From positions 1,054,001-1,118,000 of the forward strand of contig NC_086386.1 of assembly GCF_036588685.1 (NCBI RefSeq): a stretch of 64,000 bases of DNA, written 5' to 3'. Source of the DNA: Mytilus trossulus. Lineage: Eukaryota. The translations under genes were made by a program, and so were the position numbers. Each line of letters starts with the position of its first letter. Position 1 is the first letter of the stretch. Below the pieces are notes generated by a model. That model was not told where the DNA came from and did not search any database. It saw nothing but the letters and a program-made list of their open reading frames with translations. Shown one piece after another: positions 109 to 48,211 of this stretch.

Positions 109-114
109 TATGTA

Positions 115-415
115 CCGATTATCAGGTTATCTGCATGTTGATATCGTAAAATATCAGCTGCGAGACATAATATGAAGCTTTTTGTCGAGTGAGCGTAGCG
201 AACGAGATCAAAAAGCCTTCATATAATGTCAAGCAGCTGATATTTTACAATATCAATATGCAGATAATTTTATAATCGATTTATCGGGCTATATTTGCGT
301 GTTTTCTTTAATTGTTTCACCAGCACACAAAAGGTTACTTGATAAGTTCGGGTCAACGTTATTAACGTCGGTTCACACATTATGACGTCGCTGATATGTC
401 CGGGTCAAAGTTATT
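115..415 (+). mobile_element. Long-hairpin element (partial)
   Basis: Foldback 116-280 with a GCGTAGC tip. Confidence 0.62.
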
Positions 416-1771
416 AAGGGCATACGATACAGTTTCGATCCTGTATTTAAAAGTTCATGAAAATCTGCATAAAGGCTATTTTTTACCTGATTAAATCAAA
501 TATGTAATGAAAAATATACCTTCATGTGCTACTTTTTGAGTAAAATGAGGTCGAAATTTTGTATATTTGCTCGAAATTGAGATTTGTAGCCGTAATTTCT
601 TTTTCGAAAGAAAGACATAACTTTTTTGTTATAAAAGATAAAAACAAATTATATTATTTTGTGCGCACAATTTATTTATGTTGTGCGCACAATATATTTT
701 GTTTTCTTTGAATGTCCCTAGCAGGGCTCCGTAGTAAGTGGTACCTAATCTTCATCGTATTAATATACATTTGATATGTATTTATATATAAACATACATG
801 TTATATTCATTCTCAATTTTATTATAGTCATACACAAGAAGAACATTCTGATCACATCCATTCTCTTTTGTGAATCTTTGGTATCATTGACTAAATGAAT
901 ACAATTGCCTTAACCACTTTTTATCAGTTTGGTGATTTTTTTCCTGAACAGATGTATTTGATGTGTCCGACATACTATGGTGAAATGACTTTACATGATA
1001 AATCATGTTTATATCAGAAAGTAAAAGAACCCATTAAAGGCATTGATGTGAAAAATACTCGTTACCTGAAAGGTTTCTTTCAGGAGAAGAAGTCCGATAC
1101 GGATGAAACTCAGGTTATCAAACCTAGAGGAGATATGTACACCCTATCCAAACAGCATGGGAGACGTAGAAGTACAGGAACTACCCAAATTAGTGTGAGC
1201 TGTACAAGATCTACAAAAATATCCCGCCTGCCCTAAAGGTGCATAGGGTCGACCACGATCCAGTACTAATGGTACAAATATCTACCGGAGTTACACTGAC
1301 GTGGTAGTAAGTACTTAAAGGTCACCATACGGCCTCCAACAATGAAAAAAACAACATTTGGTCGGCTATAAAATGCCCCGACCATAAACATTTGAAAATA
1401 TTCAAACAAAACTAACGGCCTTATTGATAACAAAAGAGTCTACGAAAATCCGACATGAACCATGAACAGCAACCACTATACTACATGTTCCTGGCTTTTG
1501 AATGGGCATTGTCACATAAACAAATGTAGTGGCCATAAACCAAACCCTTCCCAATGAACCCAACTTAGGACAACAAACGCAAGAAAAACTGTTAAATATC
1601 AGTTGCAATTTGCTTCCCTTAGAATGTTGGTACGGTGCACAATATTCACTTACATAAAAACAATGAACACAAAGCACCGAGATAAAAGTACTCGAGGTCA
1701 CTGAAAGCTATTTCAAAACTAGCGAAAATGTAAACGCACTAGGGGACATAGACATGGACGTCAAGTTGGTT

Positions 1772-2105: not shown

Positions 2106-2364
2106 ATTTTTAATATCCTTCCCACTTTTTAATTGTTTATACTCTTATATCTGGTAATAGTTCTAAATTTGTTGAGGTAACATGATCTTTTTATGACCTA
2201 TTTATATGTGTTTGTGCTCAACCGATCCTTTTACTTTGTGTTCGATACTCATTTGTTCCTTATTTGATTTTTATACGTTCTACCTTTTAACTGCTTTATG
2301 TCCGTAAGTTTGAAGATGGATCTTGGTTCGAAGGGATGAAATCACCGTGTTAGCGCTTGTATAA

Positions 2365-2682
2365 AAAAGAAGATGTGGTATGATTGCCAATGAGACAACA
2401 CCCCACAATAGACCAAAATGACACAGAAATTGTCAACTATAGGTCACTGTACGGCCTTCAACAATGAGCATAGCCCAAACCGTGTAGTCACCTATAAAAG
2501 GCCCAGACATGACAATCTCAAAAAATTCAAACAACAAAACTAACGGCCGTATTTCATATACAAAAAAATAAACGGAAAACAATTATGTAACACAAAAACA
2601 AATAACTACTCAATTTCAGGCTCTTGTCTAGGGACAGGCACATACTAACATTATGTGGTGCGGTTAAACATGTTAGCAGGGT
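2365..2682 (+). mobile_element. Abundant unclassified interspersed repeat (also 1315-1540, 16140-16375, 43630-43940, 62300-62490)
   Basis: Shared gatgtggtatgattgccaatgagacaac...cggccttcaacaatgag. Confidence 0.6.
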
Positions 2683-2689
2683 GAACATT

Positions 2690-5560
2690 GTTTAATTCGT
2701 TCCATTACTCGCTTATAATACGTGTGTCATACGTTGCACCTTTTTAAACATGATTTTCAATTGTTTTGTTGTCTCTGGTGGTACATTTGGGTTCTTAGAG
2801 GTTATATAACTCTATAAGCGCATATATACCCGTTCCAGCTCTCGGATAATATCCTGTTAAATATTCGTTACTTATTCGCTTTTAATACGTTTGTTGTACG
2901 TTGCACCTTTTAGAAAAGGATTTTCAATAGTGTCCATGTCTCTGGTGGTAACAATGTGTTCTTAGAGATGAAATGACCCTATTAGCGCGCATGTACCCGT
3001 TCCAGCGCTCGATTATTACCCTGTTACCTTTTCGTTACCTATTCGTTATTTATTCACTTATAATACGTTTGTTGTACGTTAAACCTTTAAGAAAAGGATT
3101 TTCAATTGTGTTCATGTCTCTGGTGGTAACAATGTGTTCTTAGAGATGAAATGACCTATTAGCGCGTATGTATCCGGTCCAGCGCTTGGATAATAACCGG
3201 TTACTTATTCGTTCCTTATTCGCTTTAAATGGCAAGGTAAACGTTGTACCTTAAAATACATCGTTTTTTAATTGTGTTCATGTCTCTGGTGGTAACAATG
3301 TGTTCTTAGCGATGAAATGACCCAATAAGCGCGCATGTTCCCGTTCAAGCGCTCGGTTAATACCCTGTTACCTATCCGTTACCTATTCACTTATAATACG
3401 TTTGTTGTACATTGCACCTTCTAGAAAAAAGGATTTTCAATTGTGTCAATGACTATGGTGGTAACAATGTGTTCTAAGAAATGAAATGACCCTATTAGCG
3501 CGCATGTTCCCGTTCCAGCGCTCAGATAATATCCGGTTACTTATTCTTTACCTATTCACTTATAATACGTTTGTTGTACATTGCACCTTTTAGAAAAAAA
3601 GGATTTTCAATTACGTCCATGTCTCTGGTGGTAACAATGTGTTCTTAGAGATGAAATGACCCTAATAGCGTGCATGTATCCGTTCCAGCGCTTGGTAAAT
3701 ACCCTGTTACCTATATACAATTTTTTTCAGGTACAACGTTTTCCCTGCGTATTAAAAGCGAATAAGGAACGAATAAGTAACCGGGTATTATCCGAGCGGT
3801 GGAACGGGTACATACGCGCTAAAAGGGGTATTTTATCTATAAGAACACAATGTTACCACCAGAGATATGAACACAATTGAAAAATCCTTTTTCTAAAAGG
3901 TGCAACGTACAACAAACGTATTAAAAGCGAATAAGTAACGAATAGGTAACGAATACGTAACAGGGTATTAACCGAACGCTGAAACGGGTACATCAGCGCA
4001 AATAGGGTCTTTTCATCTCTAAGAACACAAATGGAAATCCTTTGCTAAAAGGTGCAACGTACAACAAACGTATTATAAGTGAAAATGTAACGAAAAGGTA
4101 ACGAATAGGTAACAGGGTATTAACCGATCGCTGGAATGGGTACATGCGCGCTTATATGGTCATTTCATCTCTAAGAACACATTGTTACCACCAGAGACAT
4201 GGACACAATTGAAAATCCTTTTCTAAAAGGTGCAACGTACAACACACGTATTATAAGTGAATAGGTAACGAATAGGTAACAAATTGGTAACAGGGTATTA
4301 ACCGAGCGCTGGAACGGGTACATGCGCGCTAATAGGGTCATTTCTTCTCTAAGAACACATTGTTACCACCAGAGACATGGACACAGTTGAAAATTCTTTT
4401 CTAAAAGTTGCAACGTACAACAAACGTATTATAAGTGAATAGGTAACGAATAGGTAACAAGGTATTAACCGAGCGCTGGAACAGGTGCATACGAGCTAAT
4501 AGGGTTATTTAAGAAATAATTCATGGGGGCTTGAATATATCGTGATTTTACCACGGGTTGGCCCTTTATGACAAATATTTTACCCTGAGCGATAGCGAGG
4601 GGTAAAATATCGGCATAAAGGGACAACCCGTGGTAAAATCTAGATATATTCAAGCCCCCATGAATTATTTCTATTCTAATAGGTCAAATACGGCAATTCT
4701 TTTGGATCGAAGCGCTCTAGGTGGAGGCAAATATTTTCCATTCCCATAAATAAACGCACTTTTAAATTGGCGTAAAAGAACGGAGCAAACTGAATTAGTG
4801 ACATGCTTAAACTATTTAAAATAACGTATATAGATAGTTTTAATTAATATAAATGATAATTTACTTATATGTCTTAAATATTTCAACAAATGTGGCTTAT
4901 AACACATTTTAGCATCGTTTGTTTACGTTTCCATGTTGTGATGATTTTCGGATTTAAAAGTGTGTATTTTTCCCGTAAAATGCTCATATTCTAACGTCAT
5001 CGTTTTATGACGTCGCGAAACTCATTCATAAAAAAGCATATGACGTGGGAGTACGATCGGAACAGCCCATGCAATATATTCAAATTTTACCACGGGTGTG
5101 TACTCAAAGCGTATGAAGGACGTCATGTTAGAATTCGTCTTTAAGAACACATTGTCACCACCATAACGATGGACACAATTAAAAATCCTTTTCTAAAAGG
5201 TGCAACGTACAACAAACGTATTATAAGTGAAAAGGTAACGAATAGGTAACGAATAAGTAACAGGGTATTAACCGAGCGCTGGAACGGGTACATGCGTGCT
5301 AATAGGGTCATTTCATCTCTAAGAACACATTGTTACCACCAGAGACATGGACAAAATTGAAAATCCTTTTCTAAAAGTTGCAACGTACAACAAACGTTTT
5401 ATAAGTGAATAGGTTACGAATAGGTAACAAATAGGTATCAGGATATTAACCGAGCGCTGGAACGGGTGCATACGAGTTAAGAACACATTGTTACCACCAG
5501 AACGATGGACACAATTGAAAATCCTTTTCTAAAAGGTGCAACGTACAACAAACGTATTAT
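2690..5560. repeat. ~166-179-bp satellite array: forward copies 2690-3715, inverted copies 3730-5560
   Basis: ctctggtggtaacaatgtgttcttag recurs about every 170 bp, then appears as the reverse complement. Confidence 0.92.
4510..5134 (+). mobile_element. Non-autonomous long-hairpin element inserted in a satellite monomer
   Basis: ~160-bp foldback at 4512-4672; arm core ttttaccacggg repeated at ~5085; the satellite resumes at 5135. Confidence 0.72.
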
Positions 5561-7133: not shown

Positions 7134-8036
7134 AGTTATTATTACTAGTATTTTGAAGGTTTGTTTTAACCCCGTCAGAAAGACATTATAGTCAAGTCAG
7201 AATCACCATGTGTAAAATTATAAAAAAATATCTATAGATAAATTTTAATGGTTGATACAAAACTTCACGCCAACATATACATGTGTCGAAGATAGTTCTT
7301 GTTTGTTTATTGTCGTCAGTACATAATTAAGGCAATCTGAAATTGAGCCCTGGGTCTGGACTAAAACTCAATAATGAAGGTCATACGGTAACCAATAGTT
7401 GCTTAAAATCAACATTACTCCCCCTTGTAGTTAGCTATCTGATTGTTTATATTGTTAGATATCGACCATTCATCTTTTGTGGTTAAACATAGGATTTTTA
7501 AACAGTTTTATTCTTTATGCTTCATATATACTTCATCAAATTGTCTGTACGAAATAAAATGCCCCTCCGCACCAAATTTTCAAACAAATAAAAAGATTGT
7601 GCGTTCCTTCTACGATGTCAAAATTACCGAAAGAAATAACTGCGACCTTAACAGTGCCAATTTCAAGCCTAGTTACCGGATTTTTTTTTATTGTAATGCT
7701 TTATCTACCAAAATATTGTTTTTAATCTTAGAAGTATCTATATTCCCTTTTTCATATTAAAAATTTGCCGATTTTGTTTCTTGTTTTACCGTCAAAGAAG
7801 TAGTTTTAGAGTCTGAGCTTATCACACTTTATTCACATTAGAGTCAGTTAAACGTTGATGTATATTTGGACCATTTATAATCAAAAAAAGAAAAACTAAG
7901 TGATCATGGTATGATAACATTATAATACTAAAACCAAAAGTTAGCATTTGCTATGATGAAAAGGGAAAGGCCATGTACGTTAAAAGTGATAAGTGTAATA
8001 TGTACATGGATGTTTATTCTAAATGTTTAGATGTTT

Positions 8037-8127
8037 AATAAAATATATAAACACTATAGAATCAAGGAATTGTAAATATCACTTATAAGTACAATTCCTT
8101 GATTCTATAGTGTTTATATATTTTATT
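8037..8127. repeat. Perfect 38-bp inverted repeat with a 15-nt spacer
   Basis: aataaaatatataaacactatagaatcaaggaattgta and its exact reverse complement. Confidence 0.85.
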
Positions 8128-8366
8128 CGATAACAAAAAGACAGAAATACAGTGTATTGATATGCATTGACAGATATACGCTGTAAGTGTGATATTTAAT
8201 TTATATCAACACTCGTGGTCTAGTGGTATCATGCATGAACTACAGACTTTTCTGACGAAAATACGCGCGAGTTAAAATTTAAAAAAAAAAATGCAATGGT
8301 GATCAGTGGATTCTTGAAAAATAACAATAGAACAATAGACTGACTTTATATAAACAAAATCAGTCA

Positions 8367-14300: not shown

Positions 14301-17300
14301 ACCGGCGTCAACTAGCATCATGAAATCTTCTTTAAAGTCAATGAGGTCAGTTTTTGAATCTGAAATATAGAAATATGATAGAATTTATGCATGCGAATCT
14401 ATAGTTTATAGTTGTTGATGTGTTAATCTAAACTTATTTCAATACACATGGGCATGTTATCTTTTACGAAGGTTAAAAATTGAAGCAAGGACAAACAGAA
14501 ATATTAATCAACAATAATTGAATTAATCCAGCAAGGCTTGTTCAAGTAAAACCTATAATTTCGCCCGATAAAAAGAATTTGTTTATATCAATACCAAGCT
14601 ATTTATGTTGGAGTTCAGTGTTTCTGTTGTTTTCTCTTATAGTTAATCTTTTTTCGTTTGGTTGTAGTTCTGTAATATTATGTTGTCATTTCAATGTTAT
14701 ATTTAACTTTGCCATTAAAGTGCGAGGTTTGGCATGCCATAAAACCAGGTTCAACCCACCACTTTTATTCCCCTTTAAAAGTGTCCTGTACCAAGTCAGG
14801 AAGATGGCCATTGTTATATTATTGTTCGTTTCTGTGTGTGTTGCATTTTAACGTTGAGTCGTTTGTGTTTTCTCTTATTTTTGAGATAAGACGTGGCACG
14901 GTACTTGTCTATCCCAAATTCATGTATTTGGTTTTGATGTTATATTTTTTATTTCCGATGTGTTTTGTCTGATGCTTGGTCCGTTTCTGTGTGTGTTGCG
15001 TTTCGGTGTTGTGTCGTTGTTCTCCTCTTCCCTCGGTTTTGGTTAGTAACCCCGATTTAGTTTTTTGTCCATGGATTTATGAGTTTTGAACAGCGGTATA
15101 CTACCGTTGCCTTTATTTAAATTTGTAACCAGTTTTTTTATGGCTCAATCGAACTTTGACTTAAACATAGGTTTTTAATTTTGTTTTTGCTTTTAGTTAT
15201 ATTGTGATAAACTCTTGGCTAAATATAAAGAGAATACATCAAATGATAATCTAATATTAACAAAATCATTAATAAATGCCATAACATGCAAATGATTCCC
15301 TTCAAAAATGTGTTCTAAAGAACAGATAATACCAGAAAAATTTGACATTACGTTAAAAATGTAAAAAAAACCGGTAAAAGCAGACAAAGCACAACTGTCA
15401 CTGCCAGCAAATGAAGTAACAATTGCTAGATTTAATGTCATTAAAGGTTTAATCTTTATATATAAAACATAATAATATTTTTTGCTTCATTTGGATGTAA
15501 TAAATTACGTAAATACAAGTCTTTCGTATATATCTAGCATCGTTCAAGTAAAAGCACTATGAGAAGGCTTTTCTACCTCAGGCATAGATTTACCTTAGCT
15601 GTATTTGGCAAAACTTTTAGGAATTTTGGTCGTCAATGCTCTTTAACTTCGTACTTTATTTGGCCTTTTTAACTGTTTTGGATCCGAGCGTCACTGATGA
15701 GTCTTTTGTAGACGAAACGCGCGTCTGGCGTATCCTAAATTTAGTCCTGGTATCTATGATGAGTTTATTTAAAAGTCGGACGACATACTGATACTTTTTG
15801 ACACTGTTAATCAATTTGGAATTGCATAAATCCTATAGACATAAATTTCCAATAAATCCCAGTACAAAAAGATGTTTAAAAAAATTTAGGAACTTGAAAA
15901 ATAAACTTTTCTACATTTGATATAGGAAATCAAGGTGTCCCTTGAAAGTACGAGAATCATCTAAAGCTGTTTTCAGTAATAATAAGACTTAGAAGTGATG
16001 ACGGATATACAAACACAGTCATTGGTGTTGGGCACTATCTTTTAGTTTTACTCTTAAAATAATGTCAAACATTAATACTTTATAAGATAAGAATGTGCAG
16101 TTAACGTTAACATTGCCATATAATTGTTTTGGTAGATTATATAAAAAAAGAATATGTGGTTTGATTGCCAATGACACAACTTTTTACATGAGACCAGATG
16201 ACACAGACATTAACAGCTGTATGTTACCCTATGGCCTTCTTCAATTAAATAAGCTCGTACCGCATAGTCAGCTTAAAAAGATTCCGAAATGACAAATGTA
16301 AAACAATTCACAACAGAGAAACAAATCACATCCACTGAAAAACATGATCCTGACTTAGGAAAGGCACATACATACACTAGTATTGATTGTCCCTTTGGTA
16401 TATTTCGCATATTTCCTATTGTTGCTTGTCTGTTGTCGATGATGGAACATGACTCATATGTCTTAATTTATTTTATTGCTCAATTGATGTCTTCGTCATC
16501 TATCCCCTACATCCCATGTATACTTAAAGATAGAGTACAAACTATAAAACAAATCATACAATCTCCTCTCATAACATACAACCAATTATACATTTTGTCA
16601 AGAAAAAGCTTAAGAATTTTTCATGGTTGAGTTAAAATGTAAAGACAATCGATAATAAAATAACTTGTTTTCTAATATAAGGATTTACCTGGTCCATGGA
16701 AAAGTGGTTCATCCACTGATATTCCACGTAACCAATTAGGAACTTTTCCAACAAACTTTTTATCAAACTCGCTGAACATGGGCCGCATCATATCCTTGAC
16801 AGAACTGTATACTAATCTGTGTTTCATTTAAAAAAAACCATCATAGGATCTATTAGGGACAAAATGATACAAGCAAGGACATAGATACGCTTTTAGACCT
16901 CAGCTTATATTATTTATTTAAGGAAGGACTGTAATATTTTTTCTGTCTATGAAGAAATAACATAAGAATATGGTCACACTGAATAACCCGCGAATAGGCA
17001 GATAAAATATTACAGAAATTTTTTTGAATAATTCTAAATTCCATTTTAAACCGAAGTAAACCATTAAAAAACGTCACGGTCACATGACTAAATTTTGTCT
17101 ATGAGCCGATTAACAAACCGACGTCAGCCAATCAGAAGACACGTTACGTCCAAAATTAAATTATACATACATATATGAATGAAGTTAAGGTTTGTAATAA
17201 TACGACGCGTTATGTTTTTTTGTCAATATGTTTACGATTTTGTTAACGATGAAGGCTAAGTGAAATAACAGAGCCTTCATCGGTTAGTCGCTGTTAAATG

Positions 17301-20300
17301 TGGTAAGTAAGGATCATCCAACTTTTATAAGGTAAACTTGATGTGTATCTTATAAAAGAGAGCTAAAATCTGTCGATAACATTGCATATATTTCAAAGCA
17401 GAACGTCCAAAAATGATGATTTAAAAACTAATGCATACACCAATTGGACATGGTACAATATGTTGTCTATATGTCCGATTTTGTTAAGGTTAAAATTATT
17501 GCAACATTGGATATTTTTCTTTTTTCTTTTGTTTTAAATATATGTAAGTAGGAATTTAACTGATGAAAATGGTAGCTTTACATGCTGTCCCTAAAATATA
17601 GTATAATCTGTTAATACAATGTACTTATTTGTTAATACTATTGTTACAATACCTGCAAAGGTTCCATGGATTCTCTACAATAAAAAAAAGTTCTTTCAAG
17701 AATATGAAAAATTATTCCGTTTCAGACCTTTCTTATTTTTTTTATTTTTTTTCATTTTAACCTTTTTAAATGCATATCAATGTTATTTTAATCATAGTTT
17801 ATTTTTTTGTTTTTAAAAGTCTTTAACTTCATAATTTAATTAACTCAATTGTAACTGTTGAATCTTTTGTAGCGATGCATGGGTTAATTATTCATAAACT
17901 TATATCCTGGGATATGTGATAATGTTTTTTTTCAAATTAAGTATAATTTTAAGTCTTTTTTTTCTCGTATCGGTCTTTATAGTATTCCAAAGTTATGCAA
18001 ATTATTGACAACCAAAATAATTAAACGTTCTTTCCCGTCGATGAATTTGATAGGTCAATCATCAAATCATTTATTAAATAAATGCAGTAGTAGAATACTG
18101 CTATTCGAAAGTCCTAAATCGATTGAGAGAAAACAAAACCAGGTTACTAAATCTGAGGGAAACATTAAATATAAGAAGAAAACAACGAAACAACAGAAAC
18201 ACTAAAATGCAACAAGACAAAACGACAATGCACACACATAGAATGAACTATGAGACAGCAATTGCCATTTTCCTAACTTGGTACAGGCCACTTTAAGAAA
18301 AAAAAAGGTGGGTTGAACCTGGTTTTGTGGCATGCCAAAAATCCCGCTTTAATTATGTTGTCATTTCAATTTTATATTTAACATTGCCATTAAGGTGGGA
18401 GGTTTAGCATGCCACAAAACCAGGGTCAATCCACCATATTTTCCTTTGAAAAAGGTCCTGTACCAAGTCAGGAAGATGGCCATTGTTATATTATTGTTCG
18501 TTACTGTGTGTGTTACATTTTAAAGTTGCGTCGTATGTTTTCTCTTTTTTTTTAGTGTAAATTCACATTGCGATAAGACGTGTCACGGTACTTGTCTATC
18601 CCAAATTCATGTATTTGGTTTTGATGTTATATTTGTTATTCTCGTGGGATATTGTCTGATGCCTGGTCCGTGTCTGTGTGTGTTACATTTCAGTGTTGTG
18701 TCGTTGTTCTCCTCTTATATTTAATGCGTTTCCCTCGGTTTTAGTTTGTTACCCCGATTTTGTTTTTTGTCCATGGATTTATGAGTTTTGAACAGCGGTA
18801 TACTACTGTTGCCTTTATTTATGGCAATGTTAAATATAACATTAAAATTACAACATTACATGATAATACTACAATACGAATACATGAGAGAACATATAGG
18901 ACAGAGAAACACACAAATAATAGCTAACAGAAGGTACAGTAAAACCTGTATAAACCTACCGGCTACGGGACTATGAAAAAGGGCCGATTTGGACTGTGAG
19001 CCGGTTTATTCAGGTTTCCGTTTAATCGGAAGTTAATGACTTGTGACGTCCGACATTTTGCATGTAAAAATTCTCTCTGATTGTTAAATATATCTGATAA
19101 ATTAAAATACTTTCACTTCGTTTTTCATTGTTTGCATTTGCATCATAATGCTCGTGTTGTTTGGATTGTAAGACGAGAGTTTTGATTTACTTCCATGATC
19201 AATAATTTGAAATGTTGGAATGGCCGATTAAAAGGCCAGAATATTATCAATCGTAATTTCATCACTTTAATTATCAAGGTCATTTCTTTAGGGGTTCACA
19301 ACAGGGAACCCAGGATTTTGAAATCACGATGTGAATTTCTTACTTCGCGATTTTAATTTTTTTTATCCAAGTTAAAACGTATGTTCAATCAGAGATATAT
19401 TCGGTGTGTCTTTTCCTTTAATTGACACTTTTATAATGTTTTAATAAATAATACAGCTCACTACTGTACGATTGTAGGTTCACAGTTTTACACCTGACTA
19501 ATTGATTATCAATTATGTTTTGATTTCATATCGATCATTGAAATTAATTAGACAAAGCGGTTTGACAGGTAATAATTAATGTAATAAAGAGTATTGGGAC
19601 TTCATAATTAGACCGGAATTCGGAATACACAAGGTCCGGTTTACAAAGGGTATTTTTAACAAAGACTTTGCATGGAAAAAATATGGGACTTTCATTTTCG
19701 GCTGGCATGGACAGGAAACCGGTTTATTCAGGGTCCGGTTTAATCAAGTTTGACTGTACCAGGTTTAAAATATAATACGCCAGACGTACGTTTCGTCCAC
19801 ACAAGACTTACCAGTGACGCTCAGACGAAAAAAAATCGAAAGCCAAAACAAGTACAAAGTTGAAGAGCACTGATGATCAAAAGTTCAAAAAAGTTGTGCC
19901 CAATAAGACAGGGGTTATCTGCCTAGGATAAAAACATCCTTATTATTAAGAATAATTCATATTTTTACAAACAGTAAATATCATAGGAAAACATAACTAT
20001 ATGATAGATATACATGATAAAACTGAAGTGGTGACTAACTACACAATAAAAACAGATGCGTTACATAAAACAACCTGATCCAGCACGTGAAAAATACACA
20101 GCCGGGTTAATCAAAGCCTCAACGCAATCTTTTGAACATATCTTAAATGCCTGTAGTCACTTTCGATAAAAAATCATTTTAAAACTATTAACATTATGTC
20201 AGTCGATTGAGATCTGACAACAGTTAGCATACAGTTTCTGACTTCATATACCTATGTCATGCTGTCCTTCATGTTTTAAAACTCCGTTAATATTGTAAGA

Positions 20301-23300
20301 ATACGTAACTTACCTGCTTGCATAATATTTTCTGCTATTTTCGTCTCATTAACACACATTCCTAGGAAAAAATGCCTATTTGTAAATATTGAACTATAAT
20401 GTGCTATATATACTAAGATATATCAAAGAGTTATATGTAGATATAGGAAGATGTCGTATGAGTGCTATTGAGACAACTCTCCATCCAAGTCACAATTTAT
20501 AATAGTAAACCGTTATGGGTCAAGGTAAGACATGTTTTCAAATGATTATGCGTTTTCTGTTGCAGGTTTCCTTGACGATAACAATTAATATTTTTTTTTG
20601 TTGTGAATCAACGTATGTCAAGAACAATTTTAACTGAACTTTTGAAAGCCAGTCGCTAGGAGTGACAACAAGAGGCTCTCAAAAGCCGGAATGACTAACC
20701 TGTATTTCAGATGAGAATGATGGCGACCACGTTTGTCGGTGGATCAAAACATCGGATACAATATATAAAAAAGGTACTACCCTAAGGAACACTTAGTTAA
20801 AGTTTAAAGCTATTTGGCCCAGTAGTTTCAGAGTAGAAGATTTTTAAATAGTTAACGAAGACAGACAACGACCGACTCCAAGTGATGGCTTAAGCTCACA
20901 TGGGGCCATTTGGACCTTGGAGCAAAACGAGTAACTGGTATCTCAAAGAAAACTCGAATGCATTAAGGTAAACATATTCGTTAGCAGATTTTACCTTGAA
21001 ATAACCACCGATCCACTACATCCCATCCCCTTTGTTTTTGGTGAAGGTTTGTGTTGCGTATTCTTTTATTTTCTGTCTTGTGTTTTGTATACTTTTTTTC
21101 ATATTTTTCATTTTTTCTTTTTCGTTTTTATCATGATGTTTTCAGTTTCAACCTTGTATCCAATATATTCTGTCTGACCGTTAATGCTAATGCCTTCCAT
21201 GATCGATATATAATTATGATTAGAGATACACATGGTAGGGGTATATGGCCAATACCTTAACTTTTTTTTTCTAATAAATGTGTTATACATTCCATTAGGT
21301 GAGAAGGATATAAAAAAAGTGGCATAGTTAACATTTCAGCATTAAACTATTAATGAAAATTTTATCTTTATATGAAAATTGCAGATTGTGTGTATAATTT
21401 GATTTGGAAAACACGTCTTCTGATTGGCTAAACGTGTTTTGTCTATCAGCTCAAATCCATATTTTTTCATGTTTTGCTTAACAGGTTATTCAATGTGCAC
21501 CATTTGACTATTTATTCATAGACAGACAAAAAAATCTTATAGTCATTCCTTGAAGATTTTAAAATTTGGTGTGTTTCTGATAAAACAAAAACAGACTTTG
21601 TCCACAGCAGTTTTAATCTTACTTTCTTTTTAGCACACATTGTTAGAAGAAATGGATTAAATAATGTTAATATAGAAACGCTTAAACCTGAGCTGATGAT
21701 ATCCTCAGAAACTGACAATTAATAACAAGAAAATCTTTTGAATTTGAGATACTTTAATAGTAGTATGTGATTTAATTTTGCAATACACTAACAAGTGTAT
21801 TTTGATTTGAAATCAGAAATTTATAAATTATCCAATTTGTGGAATATTAGATAACTATGGGATAAAAAAAAAACCTTCTGTTTGTGAGATAAAGTCTCTA
21901 TTGTATATCATACTATTACCTATAGCTACTTAATTGAGTCATTGTTCATATAAATATCGTGAGTATTTCGTGTTTATAACTTTTCACTAGAATCTCATAT
22001 TCCTTATTTTTTCTATTTTTGTTTTATTTTTTTGGCGTTTGTAAGTTTTGATTCTATGTGCTTGCATGATTTACCTGCTGGTCTTAAATTTCTTAGAACT
22101 GCATACCCACTCCCACACATTCCTATGTAAAACAAATGCCGTATTATAAATATACACTTTACAGACTAAATTCTATTTGGTTACAATGTGCTGAACTCTC
22201 TTTGAATCGTTTGTTATTAGACGGCTTTGGTTGTTTTTGAAGTTTTTGAAGACAATAATGAAATGATGCACATTTTTATAAAAACAGTTGCCTATATATT
22301 AGTTGCATGTGCTTAAATTAATGTCCAATCAGATTTCTTTTCTTGGCTTCTTTTAATGTTATGCTCCCAATTATCATATATCAAACAAAATCTTATCATT
22401 ACATCATATAACCCTGCAACTTTTCTGCATCTTTGTCGCGTACATGTTGTACATATACTATTTCATGAAATTAGACGCTAAAAATCATTTCTTTTTTTAA
22501 TATGAATCATATGTATAGACCTAACAGTTCTCCTAAGACTGGAGAAAAGTGTTGATTTTTTTATTTCGATTAAAGTGAACATTCACTGAAAATTGAAACA
22601 TGGGTTACGCAACCAGTGCTAAAAGAAGATCAACATTCTTTAAATCCTTCTTCCGTTACCCACAGTCAAAAGATTTAACCCTTACCCTGATTTATATTTA
22701 ACCAATGGTTATATTATATTGAGAGATGAACAACTCGAATACTATACGGCATAAGTTTTGCTCAAATCGAACGGTGTTTAATATCATTGATAGACAGATG
22801 TCTCATTGACCATCTGATTATATTTCGTATTCATACGATGACTTTATCATGTAGCAGGTACCATTTAAAAAATGTATTGTCTTTTCTTCGCCTTCCTCCA
22901 TAGCAAATCCTCCATAAAATGTATCACCGAATTTCTCCATGTCAATAGCAGCGCCATATTTCGGGATGAATACCTCATATGGTGAAAATTCAATCCATTC
23001 TGCAATATTCAAAATGATTAAAAAATATATTGTTGAATATTGATTACACAATATATATTATAGATTTAATGAAAAATTCAAAACCTCACATCAGACTACT
23101 TCTGAGGCCATGTTCACACCAAACGTCGCATACTGTCAAAATGTTTTAAATTAGTTTCATGTAATAAACAGTGGTTTCACATAAAATAAGTTCTCATCTG
23201 TGCATCGGTTTAATAACCTGTAAATGAGAATCTAATAAGTTTAATTAGAGTGGTTATTGAGACTGATGCTGCGCTAGTATCGATGTTAAGCATTGTAGAA

Positions 23301-41300: not shown

Positions 41301-44110
41301 TCAATGCCCTTTTTTCTTTCAATCAGGTTATTATTTGGTTGTATTCCCATATGAAATAACTGTACATGTGATTAGTATAATCTCAAGATAATAGTAGAAT
41401 TAACAATTGTTGGAGTGTGAAATATTCTTCGGATGTTTTGGATAAATTACGTGCTGGTGATATTCAATTTGACAGTTTTTACTTTTCAATTCTCTTACAT
41501 TACACTTCCACACACTTTTATCAAACAAAATGTCTCAACAAAGTGTAACGACAGGTTGTAGGTATGTGCACGAAATTTGCCACTGTAATAGCAGACTTTT
41601 TCTTGTACTGTTGCTAATCACAGTTTATAGTCAAACTCATTAAAAATCCGCCAATATAACATAATGATTCATTAACATTTTCCGTTATCTTGATGAAATA
41701 TTTTCGTTAAATAATCAAGAATTTTATAAACATACTGCCGAAATTTACACAATGGAATTGACTTAAAATAATCAGATATTAACGGTAATTATTATTTCTA
41801 GATTAAGATATTTGAGTTTTACACGGGAAATACACAGGTCTACCATTTACGACAAAAGAGACAATTTGTTCGTTCACTATAGTAATATTTAGACAATATA
41901 CGTATAGTGTCTTGAAATATGAAATTTATTTGTATGAGGCTTAAAAACGGGAAAATGCGAGGTTCTACCGAGCATTTTCCCGTTTCGTGCCGAATACAAA
42001 TAATTTTCATATTTCAAGACACTATACGTATATTGTCTTTATACTGAAATCGAAAAAAAAAATGAAAAATGAAAAAAACATGTAACAAAAATTGTTAAAA
42101 AAAGTGTTTGGAATTTCCCTCTTGGGGTACCATTTTGGGGTATTTCCCTATGAGCGTAGTCCAGGTGGTAAGACATTGGCGTATTACGGAATTAGAAAGG
42201 GAAAATGAACTTAATTAATAGCATTTGATAAACATGATATATAAATAACCAATTTGAAGACATAAAAGTTTTAATTCAAAAAAGTTTGACCATTGTTACT
42301 TTACGTTGTCATGGTCGTGACGTGATGTTGTTGATGAAATACAATAAGGAGGCGGGGCTTATAGGTCAATTGGGGTCATTGACGTATAAAGCTAACGTTT
42401 ATACGTATAGCTTTATCTGTACAGTAAAATAGCTGATTGCAGTATAAAAACCTTTTTCTGAGTTGCATATTTGTCTTTATGTAATATAGATTTTTATCAA
42501 TAAAAAAACTTCAAAGATGTACTTTAAAATATGATATTTTTTAAAACAAAAAGAAAAACCGAAAACTCTAGAAACAATTAGTAATATTAAAAGAAATGAT
42601 GTTTATGGAAAGCTCCAAAAAGAAATATATAATGAAATCCTACATGAGACCGCTTAAATGAGGATGAGACCCCTCTGATCTTTCAATGTTTATAAAATTA
42701 AACGAAATCATAGACTCTAAAATTGAGAAAGGAAATGTGTCAAAGCGATAACCACCCGACCATAGAGCAGACAACAGCCGAAGGCTACCAATGGGTCTTC
42801 AATATAGCGAGAATATATATAAAGGTTATATAAGAAGGAATAATGTCATCGTCGATATCTACGAAGGGCTTAGATTGCCACTTTTCAGCTGAAATTTGTC
42901 AACAATTAAGGAAAAGGGGCATATGGCAATGGTGAGAGCCCCTGATCTCTCACTCTTTCTAATAGTATGCAGACATTTAGTTTATAGGTAGATACAAACG
43001 TGACTCAAAGGAATGCGGTATACTTCCTGTTCCACGTTTACGGAGCGCCACAAGTGCCAGTTGGATATTCATATTACATAAAGACAAATATGCAACTTGA
43101 AAAGGGGTTTACGACAGCTTGAAGAGGTCATTAACCGATTTCCTACGTATCTTCTCATTCCTCTTTCAGACTATGAAAATCATGATTTTAATGCTGTCAA
43201 GTTATTTTTTATGGTTTTCAACTAAATTTTGAAAATCGAGTATCGAATAACGAACCGGCTGCTAACTTCACATACATTATAAAGAATTGTTTTTTAAGTT
43301 TGGTTGTAGACTTAGAAACTTATTTCAAACGGGGTAGCACATCCTTATTTTTACCGAGATGTTATTTACCGTGCCTGAAAATTTAGAAACGATCCTGATA
43401 AACCTATCGATCTTTTAAATATATCTTTTCTAATAAGTTACCAGTTCAACACTAAGGATATTGTTTTATTGGTATTAATTTTTATTTTGTCATCAGTATA
43501 TTAAATGCAAACTGAATGTTACTGTTATACACATTCAGTGTCGTTTTGATGTTTGGATGTACAAGTATCCAGCCACGTCTACTCTGTATTTTTGTAAGAT
43601 ATATTTCTATTTTTATCCATCTGATTAGTTAAGTCTTGTTCAACTGATTTTATAGTTTGTTCTTATGTTGTACTGACACACCACTGTCCCAAGTCAGGAG
43701 CCTGTAATTCAGTGGTTATCGTTTGTTGCTGTGAAATATATTTGTTTCGTGGATTTACTTTGTACACATATAAGGCCGTTAGTTCTCTCGTTTGAATTAC
43801 TTTTACATTTTGGGGTTAGTAACAGTTTACTATGAGGTATGGGCTTGTCTCATTGTTGAAGGCTGACGAGAGAGTTTTAGGTGTAATTGCTGTGTCATTC
43901 GGTTTCATGTTGGGAGTGTTCTCATTTGTAATCATACCATATATTCTGGTGGTTCATATTCATCTAATGGTTTGTTCTATTAATTTTGGCTTATTTCAAT
44001 TTAATAGTTACAAAGAAGGCTTTGAAATTGAAATTTCGAATCTGAAATAACTTTTTCACATCCGTAGAGTTCTATATTATATTATATACGCACCTTTCAT
44101 TTCCCAGCAT
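11211..44110 (-). CDS. PLA2G4: Cytosolic phospholipase A2 (group IV, cPLA2alpha-like), whole gene. Coding exons: 44110-44094, 39469-39442, 39138-39069, 38633-38469, 37183-37074, 35969-35938, 34138-34003, 32483-32347, 26712-26499, 25435-25327, 22999-22862, 22122-22075, 20361-20314, 17674-17653, 16816-16689, 14359-14190, 12022-11842, 11383-11211
   Basis: Manually spliced: all junctions GT-AG with compatible phases, 1926 nt = 641 aa plus stop. Motifs: WNETFRF (C2), GSGGGLR, GLSGSAW (catalytic Ser), EWIEFSPYE, LVDAGLAFNSPYP (catalytic Asp), ILSFDFS. The first two exons and the small linker exons are less certain. Confidence 0.93.
11842..12022 (-). CDS. PLA2G4: cPLA2 exon (QLEKAEEWARKRCIPFP...SPIIVHFVMINKSFRKL)
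   Basis: Conserved AE.W.....PFP and P.I.HFV..N..FR. Confidence 0.94.
13735..13935 (+). mobile_element. Degenerate retrozyme-family copy
   Basis: Homologous to 15568-15770 with a broken core (CTGGTGAG...CAAAAC). Confidence 0.6.
14190..14359 (-). CDS. PLA2G4: cPLA2 catalytic Asp exon (LVDAGLAFNSPYPTVLHPSRKVDVILSFDFS)
   Basis: Hallmark VD[SA]GL.FN.PYP...R.VD.I.SFDFS. Confidence 0.97.
15568..15770 (+). mobile_element. Retrozyme-family monomer fragment
   Basis: ggcatagattaccttagc...hammerhead...cctggtatctatgatgag, shared with the 35 kb and 47.8 kb copies. Confidence 0.75.
15688..15731 (+). ncRNA. Type I hammerhead ribozyme, intact core
   Basis: Stem I GCGUCA/UGGCGU, CUGAUGA, stem II GUCU-UUUGU-AGAC, GAAA, palindromic stem III ACGCGCGU, cleavage after GUC (15725). 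Confidence 0.85.
16689..16816 (-). CDS. PLA2G4: cPLA2 exon (RLVYSSVKDM...VGKVPNWLRGISV...GP)
   Basis: Corresponds to the cPLA2 'GKVHNFM.G' motif. Confidence 0.87.
17653..17674 (-). CDS. PLA2G4: cPLA2 22-nt microexon (ENPWNLC-R)
   Basis: ttttattgtag|...AG|gtattg; needed to convert phase 1 to 2. Confidence 0.7.
18085..18934. mobile_element. Nested pair of the same interspersed repeat family in opposite orientations (inner copy ~18351-18820)
   Basis: Outer copy split at cccgctttaa|...|atggcaatg; other family copies at 14670-15118 and 40670-40825. Confidence 0.7.
18937..19756. mobile_element. Tc1/mariner-pogo type MITE
   Basis: TA target duplication; TIRs CAGTAAAACCTGTATAAACC / GGTTTAATCAAGTTTGACTG; repeated ccggtttattcagg subterminal motif; splits the host motif aaggTAccagg. 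Confidence 0.8.
19757..20060 (-). mobile_element. Retrozyme-family copy with mutated hammerhead core (CUGGUAA)
   Basis: Reverse complement of the family; core substitutions. Confidence 0.7.
20314..20361 (-). CDS. PLA2G4: cPLA2 duplicated 48-nt exon (GMCVNETKIAENIMQA)
   Basis: Same length, phase and ends as exon 22075-22122; strong tttcctag / gtaagt sites. Confidence 0.7.
20667..20926 (+). mobile_element. Short HINE-like element
   Basis: Similar to the ends of 53702-54362. Confidence 0.55.
21688..21711 (-). CDS. Possible optional 24-nt cPLA2 microexon (VSEDIISS), not included in the 641-aa model
   Basis: Pyrimidine tract + tcag acceptor, CAG|gtttaa donor, symmetric phase 1. Confidence 0.35.
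22075..22122 (-). CDS. PLA2G4: cPLA2 48-nt exon (GMCGSGYAVLRNLRPA)
   Basis: Corresponds to the cPLA2 'G.WGSAF' motif; phase 1-1. Confidence 0.85.
22862..22999 (-). CDS. PLA2G4: cPLA2 exon (EWIEFSPYEVFIPKYGA...TIHFLNG)
   Basis: Conserved W.EFSPYE....KYG motif. Confidence 0.95.
25327..25435 (-). CDS. PLA2G4: cPLA2 exon (NVPWSEQAKKLKNGSMPLPLIAALHVREEK...)
   Basis: PLPL...LHV motif; canonical splice sites. Confidence 0.92.
25600..25930 (+). mobile_element. Penelope-derived 3' terminal repeat family (also 10030-10450, 11455-11590, 29090-29253, 33140-33660, 47240-47560)
   Basis: Shared gcaacacgacgg.tgccacat.tggagcag...ggtggggtt...ggtatctttcg. Confidence 0.6.
26499..26712 (-). CDS. PLA2G4: cPLA2 exon (WYLMSLYS...VADPFGYIISSFLLQK)
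   Basis: tatacag|G...AAG|gtaagc; lies within ORF 26436..26762. Confidence 0.92.
29480..30230 (-). mobile_element. L1/Tx1-clade LINE 3' ORF2 fragment (degenerate)
   Basis: Minus strand reads ...GKIDKIK.ATL.KDYLEGGSKMIDINLYLKALKLRWIN...NPF, typical of the Tx1 post-RT region. Confidence 0.65.
30880..31135 (-). mobile_element. Penelope-like RT fragment, inverted relative to 31395-32160
   Basis: Reverse complement encodes ASYLDLYLEIDNEG and IVNFPFLCSNIPA. Confidence 0.7.
31395..32160 (+). mobile_element. Penelope-like element RT fragment (pseudogenised)
   Basis: Frameshifted GIPMGTNC.PLL..LF, FR.IDDVL, YP.ELEIKD, SYLDLYLEID, KLYDK, NIPA.PAYGVY. Confidence 0.82.
32347..32483 (-). CDS. PLA2G4: cPLA2 catalytic exon (TPNIAIIGSGGGLRAV...YTAGLSGSAW)
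   Basis: Oxyanion GGG-R and nucleophile GLSGS motifs. Confidence 0.97.
32641..33140 (+). mobile_element. HINE-like element interrupted by another repeat (32821-33013)
   Basis: aacaagaatgtgtcc start, (GGAC/GAAC)n microsatellite, ctactatcgtag terminal hairpin. Confidence 0.6.
34003..34138 (-). CDS. PLA2G4: cPLA2 exon (HTDVKFRNINQLCRKEEIFIEKRRERVF...SEEKD)
   Basis: Matches the cPLA2 'LRF..LC..EK.F...R' helix; caatag|...|gtaagt. Confidence 0.9.
35161..35204 (+). ncRNA. Type I hammerhead ribozyme, first of a tandem pair
   Basis: gcgtca-ctgatga-gtct(tatgt)agac-gaaa-cgcgcgtc^tggcgt. Confidence 0.87.
35510..35553 (+). ncRNA. Type I hammerhead ribozyme, second of the tandem pair
   Basis: Identical core 349 nt downstream of the first. 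Confidence 0.87.
35938..35969 (-). CDS. PLA2G4: cPLA2 short exon (AKIEFDVISNP)
   Basis: gttttag|...CC|gtaagt; supplies the needed phase 0 to 2 bridge. Confidence 0.78.
37074..37183 (-). CDS. PLA2G4: cPLA2 C2-domain exon (DIRLLSFDKT...FDVNFSH)
   Basis: tttccag|...CAT|gtaagc, phase 1 to 0. Confidence 0.82.
38469..38633 (-). CDS. PLA2G4: cPLA2 C2-domain exon (VLAHIG...PTAWNETFRFIV...ELMF)
   Basis: C2 motif WNETF; tttcatag|...G|gtatgt. Confidence 0.88.
39069..39138 (-). CDS. PLA2G4: cPLA2 C2-domain exon (LSSPFAFVKFDITVKNDFRTWGV)
   Basis: ttcttcag|...G|gtaagt; beta-strand pattern of a C2 N-terminus. Confidence 0.8.
39442..39469 (-). CDS. PLA2G4: cPLA2 exon (SESKYQYYK)
   Basis: tttttag|G...AAA|gtaagt, phase 2 to 0. 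Confidence 0.7.
41889..42448 (+). mobile_element. Non-autonomous long-hairpin element inserted into a Penelope fragment
   Basis: Foldback 41891-42038; arm core tatacgtatag repeated at ~42400; a deleted inverted copy lies at 49684-49950. Confidence 0.72.
44094..44110 (-). CDS. PLA2G4: cPLA2 putative first coding exon (MLGNE-R)
   Basis: ATG CTG GGA AAT GAA AG|gtgcgt; the phase-2 donor fits the next exon. Acceptor ttacag at 44128 implies an upstream non-coding exon. Confidence 0.5.
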
Positions 44111-47814: not shown

Positions 47815-48032
47815 ATAAAATATCGAAAAACTAAGGATTTTCTTGTCCCAGGCATAGATTACCTTAGCCGTATTTGGCACAACTTTTTGGAATTTTGGAT
47901 CCTCAATGCTCTTTAACTTCGTACTTGTTTGGCTTCATAAATATTTTGATTTGAGCGTCACTGATGAGTCTTATGTAGACGAAACGCGCGTCTGGCGTAC
48001 TAAATTATAATCCTGGTACCTTTGATAACTAT
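47815..48032 (+). mobile_element. Retrozyme-family monomer fragment
   Basis: Near-identical to 35380-35588. Confidence 0.78.
47955..47998 (+). ncRNA. Type I hammerhead ribozyme, intact core
   Basis: Same core as the 35161 copy. Confidence 0.85.
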
Positions 48033-48047
48033 ATATAAGAGTTGCAA

Positions 48048-48210
48048 TATATAAAGAATAACCATACATTGTCTCAAAATATCAATCTGTTATTTGTACT
48101 CGGCTCGAAACAGGTAGAAATGCTCGGCACAGCCTCGCTTTCTACCTGTTTCTAAGCCTTGTACAAATGACATTGATATTTCGAGACAATGTATGGTTAT
48201 TCTATATATA
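48048..48210 (-). repeat. Long imperfect palindrome of the hairpin-element class
   Basis: Arms agaataaccatacattgtctc...gagacaatgtatggttattct. Confidence 0.7.
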
Positions 48211-48211
48211 T

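What the first reader, a model, noticed from the sequence alone, without database searches (positions are those of the whole stretch)
4510..5134. Shared architecture across sequence-unrelated hairpin elements: a possible ssDNA-fold mobile-element class
This element has [long hairpin with CT-GA-GC(GATA)GC-GA-GG tip][short IR attcta]...[second copy of the arm core ttttaccacggg][short IR tagaat], with no obvious TSD. The same layout occurs at 41889-42448 (core tatacgtatag; IR atactgaaatc/gattgcagtat) and in deleted form at 8037-8205, 16925-17165 and 21380-21560. At least four families share structure but not sequence, which suggests a common mobilising enzyme. A Crypton/DIRS-type tyrosine recombinase or an HUH nuclease is my inference; no such ORF is in the window. 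These may already be catalogued as non-autonomous Cryptons, but I do not know of the G.A-tip code being described.
Basis: partly seen in the sequence, partly recalled or inferred. Interest (0 to 1): 0.78.

Follow-up and report, generated by a model that had tools for sequence, protein, structure and literature searches.

The report
Hairpin-ended miniature Crypton transposons
These roughly 600-base repeats are most likely stripped-down copies of tyrosine-recombinase (Crypton) jumping genes of a bivalve, and they share an unusual long-hairpin end that may show how this poorly understood transposon class recombines.

Summary
The layout is real at 4510-5134 (fam1) and 41890-42447 (fam2). Each has a ~160-nt terminal hairpin with tandem G.A mismatches at the tip, a short inverted repeat split between the hairpin foot and the far end, and a third copy of an arm segment near the far end. 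Both are young, high-copy families (2108 and 1209 first-look candidates; the 40 scored copies are 96-99% identical). They insert without target duplication and share the left target motif W-T-A-N-T.

I first read them as Helentron (HLE2) derivatives. The one Helentron 3' end I examined has a short palindrome and different termini. The hairpin / inverted repeat / core-copy layout instead recurs in elements whose only long ORF is a DUF3504 tyrosine recombinase: L087 (2.5 kb, 5 intact copies), L082 (3.6 kb) and, with the whole palindrome at one end, L089 (3.9 kb, exact empty site). A third window hairpin (116-278) is 79% identical to L089's.

Best reading: non-autonomous Cryptons (confidence 0.78). 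The direct partner of fam1/fam2 was not found. The three "deleted forms" are not confirmed as the same class. Papers I read report no terminal repeats in animal Cryptons, so this is a new variant of a known kind.

The parts
4505..4509 (+). Left target motif of the fam1 insertion (TTATT here; consensus W-T-A-N-T). It is host DNA.
   Evidence: 30 copies: T at -4 in 23/30, A at -3 in 23/30, T at -1 in 30/30. Fam2 shows ATANT in 11/11 copies.
4510..5134 (+). fam1: a 625-bp non-autonomous element, TAAGAAAT...GTTAGAAT. One T at either junction cannot be assigned to element or host.
   Evidence: 2108 candidates; 39 of the 40 scored are other full-length copies at 96-97% identity. Ends. No target duplication.
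4512..4672 (+). Terminal hairpin: arms 4512-4586 and 4598-4672, tip 4587-4597, with tandem G.A/A.G mismatches.
4673..4679 (+). Short inverted repeat a (ATTCTAA) at the foot of the hairpin.
   Evidence: It pairs with 5128-5134.
5073..5097 (+). Third copy of the arm core. It is direct to 4534-4558 and inverted to 4626-4650.
   Evidence: D2 84%, I2 88%.
5128..5134 (+). Short inverted repeat b (TTAGAAT), which is the far end of the element.
   Evidence: conserved in 29-30 of 30 copies.
5135..5142 (+). Right target DNA: six variable bases followed by T.
   Evidence: T at +7 in 28/30 copies.
41890..42447 (+). fam2: a 558-bp non-autonomous element, TAGACAAT...GCAGTATAA, with the same layout as fam1.
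   Evidence: 1209 candidates; 40 scored (the window's own copy and 39 others, these at 97-99% identity). Ends.
41886..42043 (+). fam2 hairpin (69-nt arms, 84% complementary). The tip carries two G.A/A.G pairs.
42039..42051 (+). fam2 inverted repeat a (TTATACTGAAATC).
   Evidence: It is complementary to 42435-42447 in 12 of 13 positions.
42400..42410 (+). fam2 far-end copy of the arm core (TATACGTATAG, the same as 41897-41907).
42435..42447 (+). fam2 inverted repeat b (GATTGCAGTATAA), the far end of the element.
   Evidence: 11/11 copies.
112..416 (+). el0: a small element related to the recombinase-encoding family L089. The hairpin is at 116-278. The left end at 112 (GTAC) is supported; the right end near 416 is only inferred.
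   Evidence: (79% over 121 nt, E 3e-21).
48047..48211 (-). A long hairpin whose G.A mismatches lie on the minus strand. Its element and polarity are unresolved. It sits between a retrozyme copy and an abundant 530-bp repeat.
47985..48015 (+). Paralogous empty site for fam1 copy L002, inside a retrozyme-like repeat. Two more lie at 35190-35225 and 35540-35575.
16905..17165 (+). An older high-copy family with a short left-end hairpin (16919-16991). The stretch 21380-21560 is the same family on the minus strand. Its class is not established.
7900..8273 (+). An older repeat that contains the AT-rich hairpin 8026-8138 internally. There is no G.A tip, and it is not shown to belong to this class.

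Best explanation
Fam1 (4510-5134) and fam2 (41890-42447), and probably the small element at 112-416, are non-autonomous, MITE-like derivatives of Crypton-type DNA transposons. They would be moved in trans by a DUF3504-type tyrosine recombinase encoded elsewhere in the genome.

Shown: the same hairpin / inverted repeat / core-copy layout bounds recombinase-only elements that insert precisely, without target duplication, and that spawn internal-deletion derivatives.

Inferred mechanism: the element leaves or copies itself as a circle in which the far end abuts the hairpin end. The far-end short repeat then completes the foot of one long imperfect palindrome. The recombinase binds the repeated arm-core motifs and exchanges strands at the small unpaired spacer between the outer stem (7-14 bp) and the long inner stem. 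Integration therefore splits the palindrome asymmetrically, which produces the integrated layout.

The tandem G.A mismatches lie on the same strand relative to element polarity in every family where I could fix polarity. This suggests that one strand folds, as a hairpin or an extruded cruciform, and is the strand read by the enzyme. That would resemble integron attC sites.
For: (1) Three recombinase elements have a long terminal hairpin.
- L087 family: 2484 bp, 507-aa ORF with DUF3504 plus a weak Phage_integrase match, and 5 intact copies at 99-100% protein identity. It has a left-end hairpin with 68-nt arms and tip GGT-GA-GGGC(GAAA)GCCC-GA-ACC. TTGTGTGGTTATGC just after the hairpin is the reverse complement of the far end GCATAACCACACAA. 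An arm-core copy, ACATGGTTATTTAG, lies about 60 nt from that end. There is no target duplication.
- L082 family: 3.64 kb, with the same layout, tandem units sharing one junction, and a solitary copy.
- L089 family: 3881 bp, 637-aa recombinase ORF, and an exact empty site with no duplication. Here the whole extended palindrome lies at one end.

(2) Both ORFs keep the R...HxxR...H...Y positions (read by eye).

(3) The window hairpin at 116-278 is homologous to L089's. The tip is identical over 36 nt, and 10 of 62 stem pairs show changes on both sides across 11 relatives.

(4) Internal-deletion derivatives of L087 keep both ends (for example 1682-2319 joined to 3920-4144).

(5) In 7 oriented hairpins the mismatches are G.A/A.G 21 times and C.T/T.C once.

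(6) Fam1 and fam2 share the left target W-T-A-N-T and similar left termini: TTAAGAAAT and TTAGACAAT, compared with TTAAGTTAT in L082 and TATAAGTTAT in L087.

(7) A 2026 preprint reports Crypton-A among the most active transposons in an oyster (10.64898/2026.02.10.705023, passages).
Against: No recombinase-encoding element with the fam1 or fam2 termini was found. Blastn of the window against the recombinase-gene regions I fetched gave no hit to either family. Those regions were 6 loci sampled on both sides of the gene, 17 upstream-only stretches and 9 further stretches.

Only 3 of the 6 loci sampled on both sides have a long hairpin, and 0 of the 17 upstream-only stretches do. Many Cryptons here therefore lack the structure or carry it elsewhere.

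The layout also resembles HLE2: short terminal repeats plus an end stem-loop and no target duplication.

The hairpin at 48047-48211 has its G.A pairs on the strand opposite to that expected from its apparent position.

Nearest-neighbour energies do not consistently favour the G.A strand. No circle junction was seen among the joints that read laying listed; 139 more were not shown.
Confidence: 0.78

Rival explanations
1. They are non-autonomous Helentron/Helitron2 (HLE2, HINE-like) rolling-circle elements. On this reading the short inverted repeats are the subterminal repeats, the long hairpin is an oversized terminal palindrome, and a Rep/Hel(/endonuclease) protein moves them.
For: HLE2 elements have 11-18-nt terminal repeats, a stem-loop after the right repeat, no target duplication and T-rich targets (PMC11417382 and PMC4067079, passages). 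A reversed form with a 5' stem-loop exists. FoHeli elements insert after TNAT (PMC5148889).

The genome holds at least 115 Rep matches, many of them in open frames of 2000-3100 aa that carry DUF6570 plus Helitron_like_N.
Against: The only Helentron 3' end examined (L061) has the subterminal repeat GGAAAGACC plus a 6-8-bp palindrome, as does its 1.8-kb HINE. The long-hairpin layout bounds recombinase-only elements with exact empty sites. Fam1 has T at +1 in only 14/30 copies, so it does not insert at T^T. The palindromes here are about 150 nt, against 5-10 bp reported for HINEs.
Confidence: 0.1
2. They are moved by an enzyme class not yet linked to such ends in animals, for example a small HUH Y1 nuclease of the IS200/IS605 or Replitron type. 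The hairpins beside recombinase genes would then be a coincidence or a shared host-factor site.
For: Several features are hallmarks of HUH transposons: one-strand-biased hairpins, insertion 3' of a short motif (WTANT), no target duplication and asymmetric ends (general knowledge; PMC10288648 passages).
Against: Replitrons have short direct terminal repeats and are reported from plants, algae and protists. No such gene was sought or seen here. The recombinase elements have their exact boundaries at these structures.
Confidence: 0.06
3. They are ordinary DDE-type foldback or MITE elements.
For: They are short, AT-rich, high-copy and contain long inverted repeats.
Against: Two independent sets of empty sites show no target duplication. 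The ends are asymmetric: a hairpin at one end only and a 7-13-nt repeat at the other.
Confidence: 0.02

Closest known systems
Crypton-A DNA transposons and their non-autonomous derivatives (Kojima & Jurka 2011, PMC3212892)
   Same: The only gene is a DUF3504-type tyrosine recombinase and there is no reverse transcriptase. Insertion is precise, without target duplication. Non-autonomous derivatives far outnumber the autonomous copies.
   Different: That paper reports no terminal repeats, direct or inverted, in animal Cryptons and does not mention hairpins (passages). A curation guide calls Cryptons generally low-copy. The elements here have a 140-190-nt terminal palindrome with G.A-mismatch tips, a split short inverted repeat and a far-end core copy, and the derived families have more than 1000-2000 copies.
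Integron attC sites recombined by IntI (recalled knowledge, not from a call)
   Same: Both are imperfect palindromes whose asymmetries sit on one strand. In both, the crossover lies near the foot of the stem, so the integrated unit carries most of the palindrome at one end and a few bases of it at the other. Both depend on a tyrosine recombinase.
   Different: attC sites are bacterial and 57-141 nt long, and their strand choice depends on extrahelical bases, not on G.A pairs. Single-strand recombination is untested here.
Helentron/Helitron2 (HLE2) and HINE/DINE-1 elements
   Same: They have short terminal or subterminal inverted repeats plus a stem-loop at one end, no target duplication, T-rich targets and tandem arrays, and they are abundant in bivalves.
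   Different: They are moved by Rep/Hel, their palindrome is 5-20 bp, and they insert at T^T. The Helentron end examined here differs.
DIRS1-type retrotransposons (internal complementary region)
   Same: They are tyrosine-recombinase elements in which internal sequence is complementary to the joined ends (background passage).
   Different: DIRS elements encode RT/RNase H and replicate through RNA. No RT ORF is present in L087 or L089.

Membership tests
Crypton (non-autonomous derivative) | An autonomous partner encoding a tyrosine recombinase shares the termini | tested here: inconclusive
   For fam1 and fam2, no partner was found in any fetched recombinase-gene region. For the element at 112-416, the hairpin end is 79% identical to recombinase element L089 and starts at the same GTAC. 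The same layout occurs in L087 and L082.
Crypton (non-autonomous derivative) | No target-site duplication and no classical terminal inverted repeats; precise site-specific-type insertion | tested here: met
   Empty sites for fam1 are, and for L089. At most one shared T (fam1) or TTAA (L082) lies at the joints.
Crypton (autonomous elements L087, L089) | Tyrosine-recombinase domain with the catalytic R-H-R-Y positions, and no reverse transcriptase | tested here: met
   Pfam gives DUF3504 (38-88 bits) plus a sub-threshold Phage_integrase match. RG, HSxR and GHK...Y are conserved between the two proteins (read by eye). The recombinase ORF is the only ORF of 100 aa or more that lies wholly inside element L087; in L089 a 129-aa ORF on the other strand overlaps its start. 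Catalysis is untested.
Helentron/Helitron2 (HLE2) non-autonomous element | Insertion between T and T | tested here: not met
   Fam1 has T at -1 in 30/30 copies, but the base at +1 is T 14, A 8, G 6, C 2. The wider motif is WTANT^N6T.
Helentron/Helitron2 (HLE2) non-autonomous element | Termini shared with a Rep/Hel-encoding element | tested here: inconclusive
   One Helentron 3' end (L061) was examined and differs. More than 100 other Rep loci were not examined at their ends.
Helentron/Helitron2 (HLE2) non-autonomous element | Subterminal repeats of 11-18 nt plus a short palindrome after the right repeat | tested here: inconclusive
   The topology matches. The inverted repeat is 7 nt in fam1, 13 nt in fam2 and 14 nt in L087. 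The palindrome is 140-190 nt, against 5-10 bp reported.
DDE foldback/MITE | Target-site duplication and symmetric terminal inverted repeats | tested here: not met
Replitron | Short direct terminal repeats; Y1 Rep gene | tested here: not met
   The ends are inverted, not direct. Replitrons are reported from plants, algae and protists. A Rep-Y1 gene was not searched for.

The most novel reading that the evidence does not exclude
A lineage of animal Cryptons recombines through a folded, one-strand-specific DNA hairpin, a eukaryotic counterpart of integron attC. The tandem sheared G.A pairs and GNA/GAA mini-loops at the tip would mark which strand folds. The crossover would sit at an unpaired spacer near the stem foot. 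This simple cis-signal would have allowed several unrelated miniature families to reach thousands of copies in bivalve genomes.
Probability: 0.3. Interest if true: 0.8.

Novelty: new variant of a known kind. Interest (0 to 1): 0.6.

Why it matters
Cryptons are the least understood order of eukaryotic DNA transposons. Their ends are described as featureless apart from a few bases of direct repeat, no recombination site has been defined, and no transposition assay exists that I know of.

A defined, compact cis-architecture would turn this into a testable system. The pieces are a hairpin, a split inverted repeat and a repeated core motif. They are shared by intact recombinase-encoding copies (5 copies at 99-100% protein identity) and by families with thousands of copies. 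The system could be tested with a mini-element plus the recombinase, using folded or duplex substrates and G.A-to-Watson-Crick mutants.

There is also a practical point for annotation. These high-copy bivalve repeats can look like Helentron derivatives or foldback MITEs, and may be misclassified.

Tried and rejected
1. Helentron/HLE2 was my first reading (stated, odds about 70%). I searched Rep, typed the proteins, fetched the 3' side of one Helentron and read the HLE2 literature. I dropped it to 0.1 once the Helentron end proved different and recombinase elements with the layout were found.

2. Replitrons were rejected. They have direct terminal repeats and are not reported from animals.

3. 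The search for the fam1/fam2 partner failed. Own-genome DNA searches score only about 40 candidates and are saturated by the short copies. I sampled recombinase loci blindly: 6 loci on both sides of the gene, 17 upstream stretches and 9 more stretches. None had a fam1 or fam2 hit.

Reads show a sibling family that shares the hairpin up to 4692 and then diverges (103 reads).

4. Strand preference by nearest-neighbour energy gave no consistent difference between the strands. Mismatch counts do show a bias.

5. Circle or tandem junction reads: none appeared among the 15 joints listed, and 139 were not shown. This gives no conclusion.

6. The family of the hairpin at 48047 is unresolved. The search was swamped by the neighbouring 530-bp repeat.

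7. Literature on Crypton hairpins: five searches found no description. Additional file 1 of PMC3212892, which lists Crypton termini, and the HELIANO supplementary figures could bear on the novelty claim. Repbase and Dfam were not available.
Full report
WHAT IS THERE

The window is AT-rich eukaryotic DNA (about 32% GC) from a 1.3-Gb assembly. Earlier notes of this scan call it a mussel; I did not verify that.

At 4510-5134 lies a 625-bp insertion inside a 178-bp satellite. It has the following parts.
- A terminal hairpin with 75-nt arms, 87% complementary. The DNA-parameter energy is -74.8 kcal/mol and z is -22.6 against shuffles.
- A tip that folds as CT-GA-GC(GATA)GC-GA-GG, with tandem G.A/A.G mismatches.
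- A 7-nt inverted repeat split between the hairpin foot (ATTCTAA, 4673-4679) and the far end (TTAGAAT, 5128-5134).
- A third copy of a 25-nt arm segment at 5073-5097.

The element at 41890-42447 has the same plan with unrelated sequence.

BOTH ARE YOUNG, HIGH-COPY FAMILIES

Fam1 gave 2108 first-look candidates. Forty were scored: the window's own copy and 39 other full-length copies at 96-97% identity. Fam2 gave 1209 candidates, and the 39 other scored copies were 97-99% identical.

Thirty aligned fam1 copies fix the ends as T-TAAGAAAT...GTTAGAAT. Reads from a 2026 WGS run and contigs from three other organism labels pile up exactly between 4509/4510 and 5134/5135. The family is therefore shared by several related taxa (runs from at least five organism labels hold it).

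INSERTION MAKES NO TARGET DUPLICATION

Neighbouring satellite monomers read TCATTTC, where the filled monomer reads TTATT[T...element...T]TCG. The T run is three long in 8 of the 10 monomers read there, and four long in 2. Reads and contigs skip exactly 625 nt.

Fam1 copy L002 sits in a retrozyme-like repeat. Three empty paralogues of that repeat in this window read ggcgtac-T-aaatta.

The target is not random. For fam1 it is W-T-A-N-T^N6-T, with T at -4 in 23/30, A at -3 in 23/30, T at -1 in 30/30 and T at +7 in 28/30. For fam2 the left target is A-T-A-N-T in 11/11 copies. Two families of unrelated sequence that share a target and similar left termini point to the same or closely related enzymes.

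FIRST HYPOTHESIS, ABANDONED

The plan (short terminal repeats, an end stem-loop, no duplication, T-rich targets) matches published Helentron/Helitron2 (HLE2) and HINE architecture (PMC11417382, PMC4067079, PMC7492417, PMC5148889; passages).

The genome has at least 115 Rep matches. Many lie in open frames of 2000-3100 aa with DUF6570 plus Helitron_like_N.

However, the one Helentron 3' end I fetched (L061) ends with GGAAAGACC and a 6-8-bp palindrome. The 1.8-kb tandem HINE beside it uses the same short signals. Replitrons do not fit either.

THE TURN

Earlier notes of this scan disagreed: three called such hairpins Crypton ends and one called them Helentron-like. I tested this directly.

A DUF3504 search found 341 candidates. 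Six loci were sampled on both sides of the gene, and three have a long hairpin.

L087 family. The element is 2484 bp. Its only long ORF is a 507-aa protein with DUF3504 and a weak Phage_integrase match. Five copies are 99-100% identical at protein level.
- It begins with a hairpin of 68-nt arms whose tip is GGT-GA-GGGC(GAAA)GCCC-GA-ACC.
- The 14 nt just after the hairpin, TTGTGTGGTTATGC, are the reverse complement of the far end GCATAACCACACAA.
- A copy of the arm segment ACATGGTTATTTAG lies about 60 nt from that end.
- The flanks show no duplication.

Internal-deletion derivatives that keep both ends also exist.

L082 family. The element is 3.64 kb with the same plan. In tandem units the far end abuts the hairpin and the two share one TTAA. 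A solitary copy confirms the ends.

L089 family. The element is 3881 bp with a 637-aa recombinase ORF. An exact empty site at a paralogous locus shows no duplication. Here the hairpin lies on the 3' side of the gene and the whole extended palindrome is at one end.

Both proteins keep RG, HSxR and GHK...Y (read by eye).

The window hairpin at 116-278 is 79% identical to L089's (E 3e-21) and starts at the same GTAC. Across 11 relatives the tip is nearly invariant, while 10 of 62 stem pairs show changes on both sides.

Two further recombinase families have 110-147-nt palindromes within about 1 kb of the ORF (L125-L127). I did not map their ends.

COUNTER-EVIDENCE

No fetched recombinase locus carries fam1 or fam2 sequence, so their partner is unidentified. 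None of 17 upstream-only stretches has a long hairpin, and L083, L084 and L088 have none.

The hairpin at 48047-48211 has its G.A pairs on the opposite strand, and its element could not be defined.

THE G.A 'CODE'

In seven hairpins oriented with the hairpin at the element's left end, symmetric mismatches are G.A/A.G 21 times and C.T/T.C once. One of the seven (L127) was oriented by analogy only. YGAR motifs number 4-7 on that strand and 0-3 on the complement.

In the five families whose polarity is fixed independently, all tandem mismatches are G.A. This is suggestive, not proof: about 0.03 one-sided if each family counts once. Thermodynamic parameters do not reproduce a strand preference.

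MECHANISM (INFERRED)

If the ends are joined, as they are in the L082 tandem, the far-end repeat pairs with the repeat at the hairpin foot. This gives an outer stem of 7-14 bp. A small unpaired spacer separates it from the long inner stem: TA/TTA in fam1, T/TT in fam2, TATAA opposite ATTT in L087. The integrated ends correspond to a cut exactly between the outer stem and the spacer on the G.A strand.

Three copies of the arm core flank this point and are candidate protein-binding sites.

This is the logic of a tyrosine-recombinase site placed at the foot of a structured palindrome. It resembles integron attC (recalled knowledge). Whether the substrate is single-stranded, a cruciform or plain duplex is untested.

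THE OTHER LOCI IN THE FINDING

The hairpin at 8026-8138 lacks G.A pairs and lies inside an older repeat that extends beyond the stated bounds. The stretches 16905-17165 and 21380-21560 are one older family in opposite orientations, with only a short left hairpin. I cannot assign them.

KNOWN OR NEW

Non-autonomous Cryptons have been known since 2011. That paper states that animal Cryptons show no terminal repeats, and it does not mention hairpins (PMC3212892, passages). A 2022 curation guide gives a short direct repeat as the only feature and calls them low-copy (PMC8969392). [quoted passage not shown] A 2026 preprint finds Crypton-A among the most active elements in an oyster.

Five full-text searches found no description of Crypton hairpin ends. 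Supplements, Repbase and Dfam were not available to me.

VERDICT

This is a new structural variant of a known kind. Interest is 0.6.

Noticed in passing
window 48047-48211: A long hairpin with tip GC-GA-GGC(TGT)GCC-GA-GC, read on the minus strand. It is wedged between a retrozyme-like repeat and a 530-bp repeat with 7146 candidates. The G.A strand is opposite to the rule seen in the other families. It may be a solo hairpin or the end of a broken element.
   Followed up: partly
G000 Rep loci listed (for example C7:50119764 and 50142652; C6:16293592 and 16315204; C4:39692807, 39712614 and 39741769): There are dozens of apparently intact Helentron-type ORFs of 2800-3100 aa. Several lie in pairs or triplets spaced 20-29 kb apart, which suggests tandem arrays of very large, recently active Helentrons.
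   Followed up: no
L061:900-2890: Directly after the Helentron 3' end lies a 1.8-kb HINE-like unit (2577 candidates, tandem elsewhere). It has 5' AGGTCTTTCC hairpins, an (ATT)n microsatellite, and a 3' GGAAAGACC followed by a caattg...caattg palindrome.
   Followed up: partly
L087:1681/4144 compared with empty sites L112 and L113: This otherwise intact Crypton copy lacks the last 21 nt of its far end. The target lacks about 14-16 nt compared with five paralogous empty sites. Either the insertion was imprecise or a later deletion spanned the joint.
   Followed up: partly
window 2695-3714 (minus orientation) and 3869-5471 (plus orientation): The 167-178-bp satellite that hosts fam1 occurs as two arrays in opposite orientation. 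They are separated by a 25/36-nt CCTATTC-type repeat at 1775-2104.
   Followed up: no
window 35100-35590, 47852-48037 and other places (one search hits to L106): Hammerhead-retrozyme-like repeats occur at least nine times in the window. They are a target of fam1 insertion elsewhere (copy L002).
   Followed up: partly
L082:3477-3698; window 2359-2581, 16120-16321, 43745-43947, 62280-62494: A separate 222-bp repeat with 4386 candidates is inserted in the L082 Crypton and is present several times in the window.
   Followed up: no
window 4990-5125, 42300-42390, 380-400, 17070-17150, 19040-19055: TGACGT/ACGTCA (CRE-like) motifs recur in the far-end halves of the hairpin elements and in the 16905-17165 family. 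Their significance is unknown.
   Followed up: no
window 4658-4692 (loose ends): Reads reveal sibling families. About 103 reads share fam1 up to 4692 and then continue with a different, consistent sequence. About 294 reads share fam1 from 4658 onward but have a different sequence before it. Either could lead to the autonomous partner.
   Followed up: no
window 18300-18442: A 143-nt palindrome (54-nt arms, 83% complementary) without a G.A tip. It looks like a MITE.
   Followed up: no
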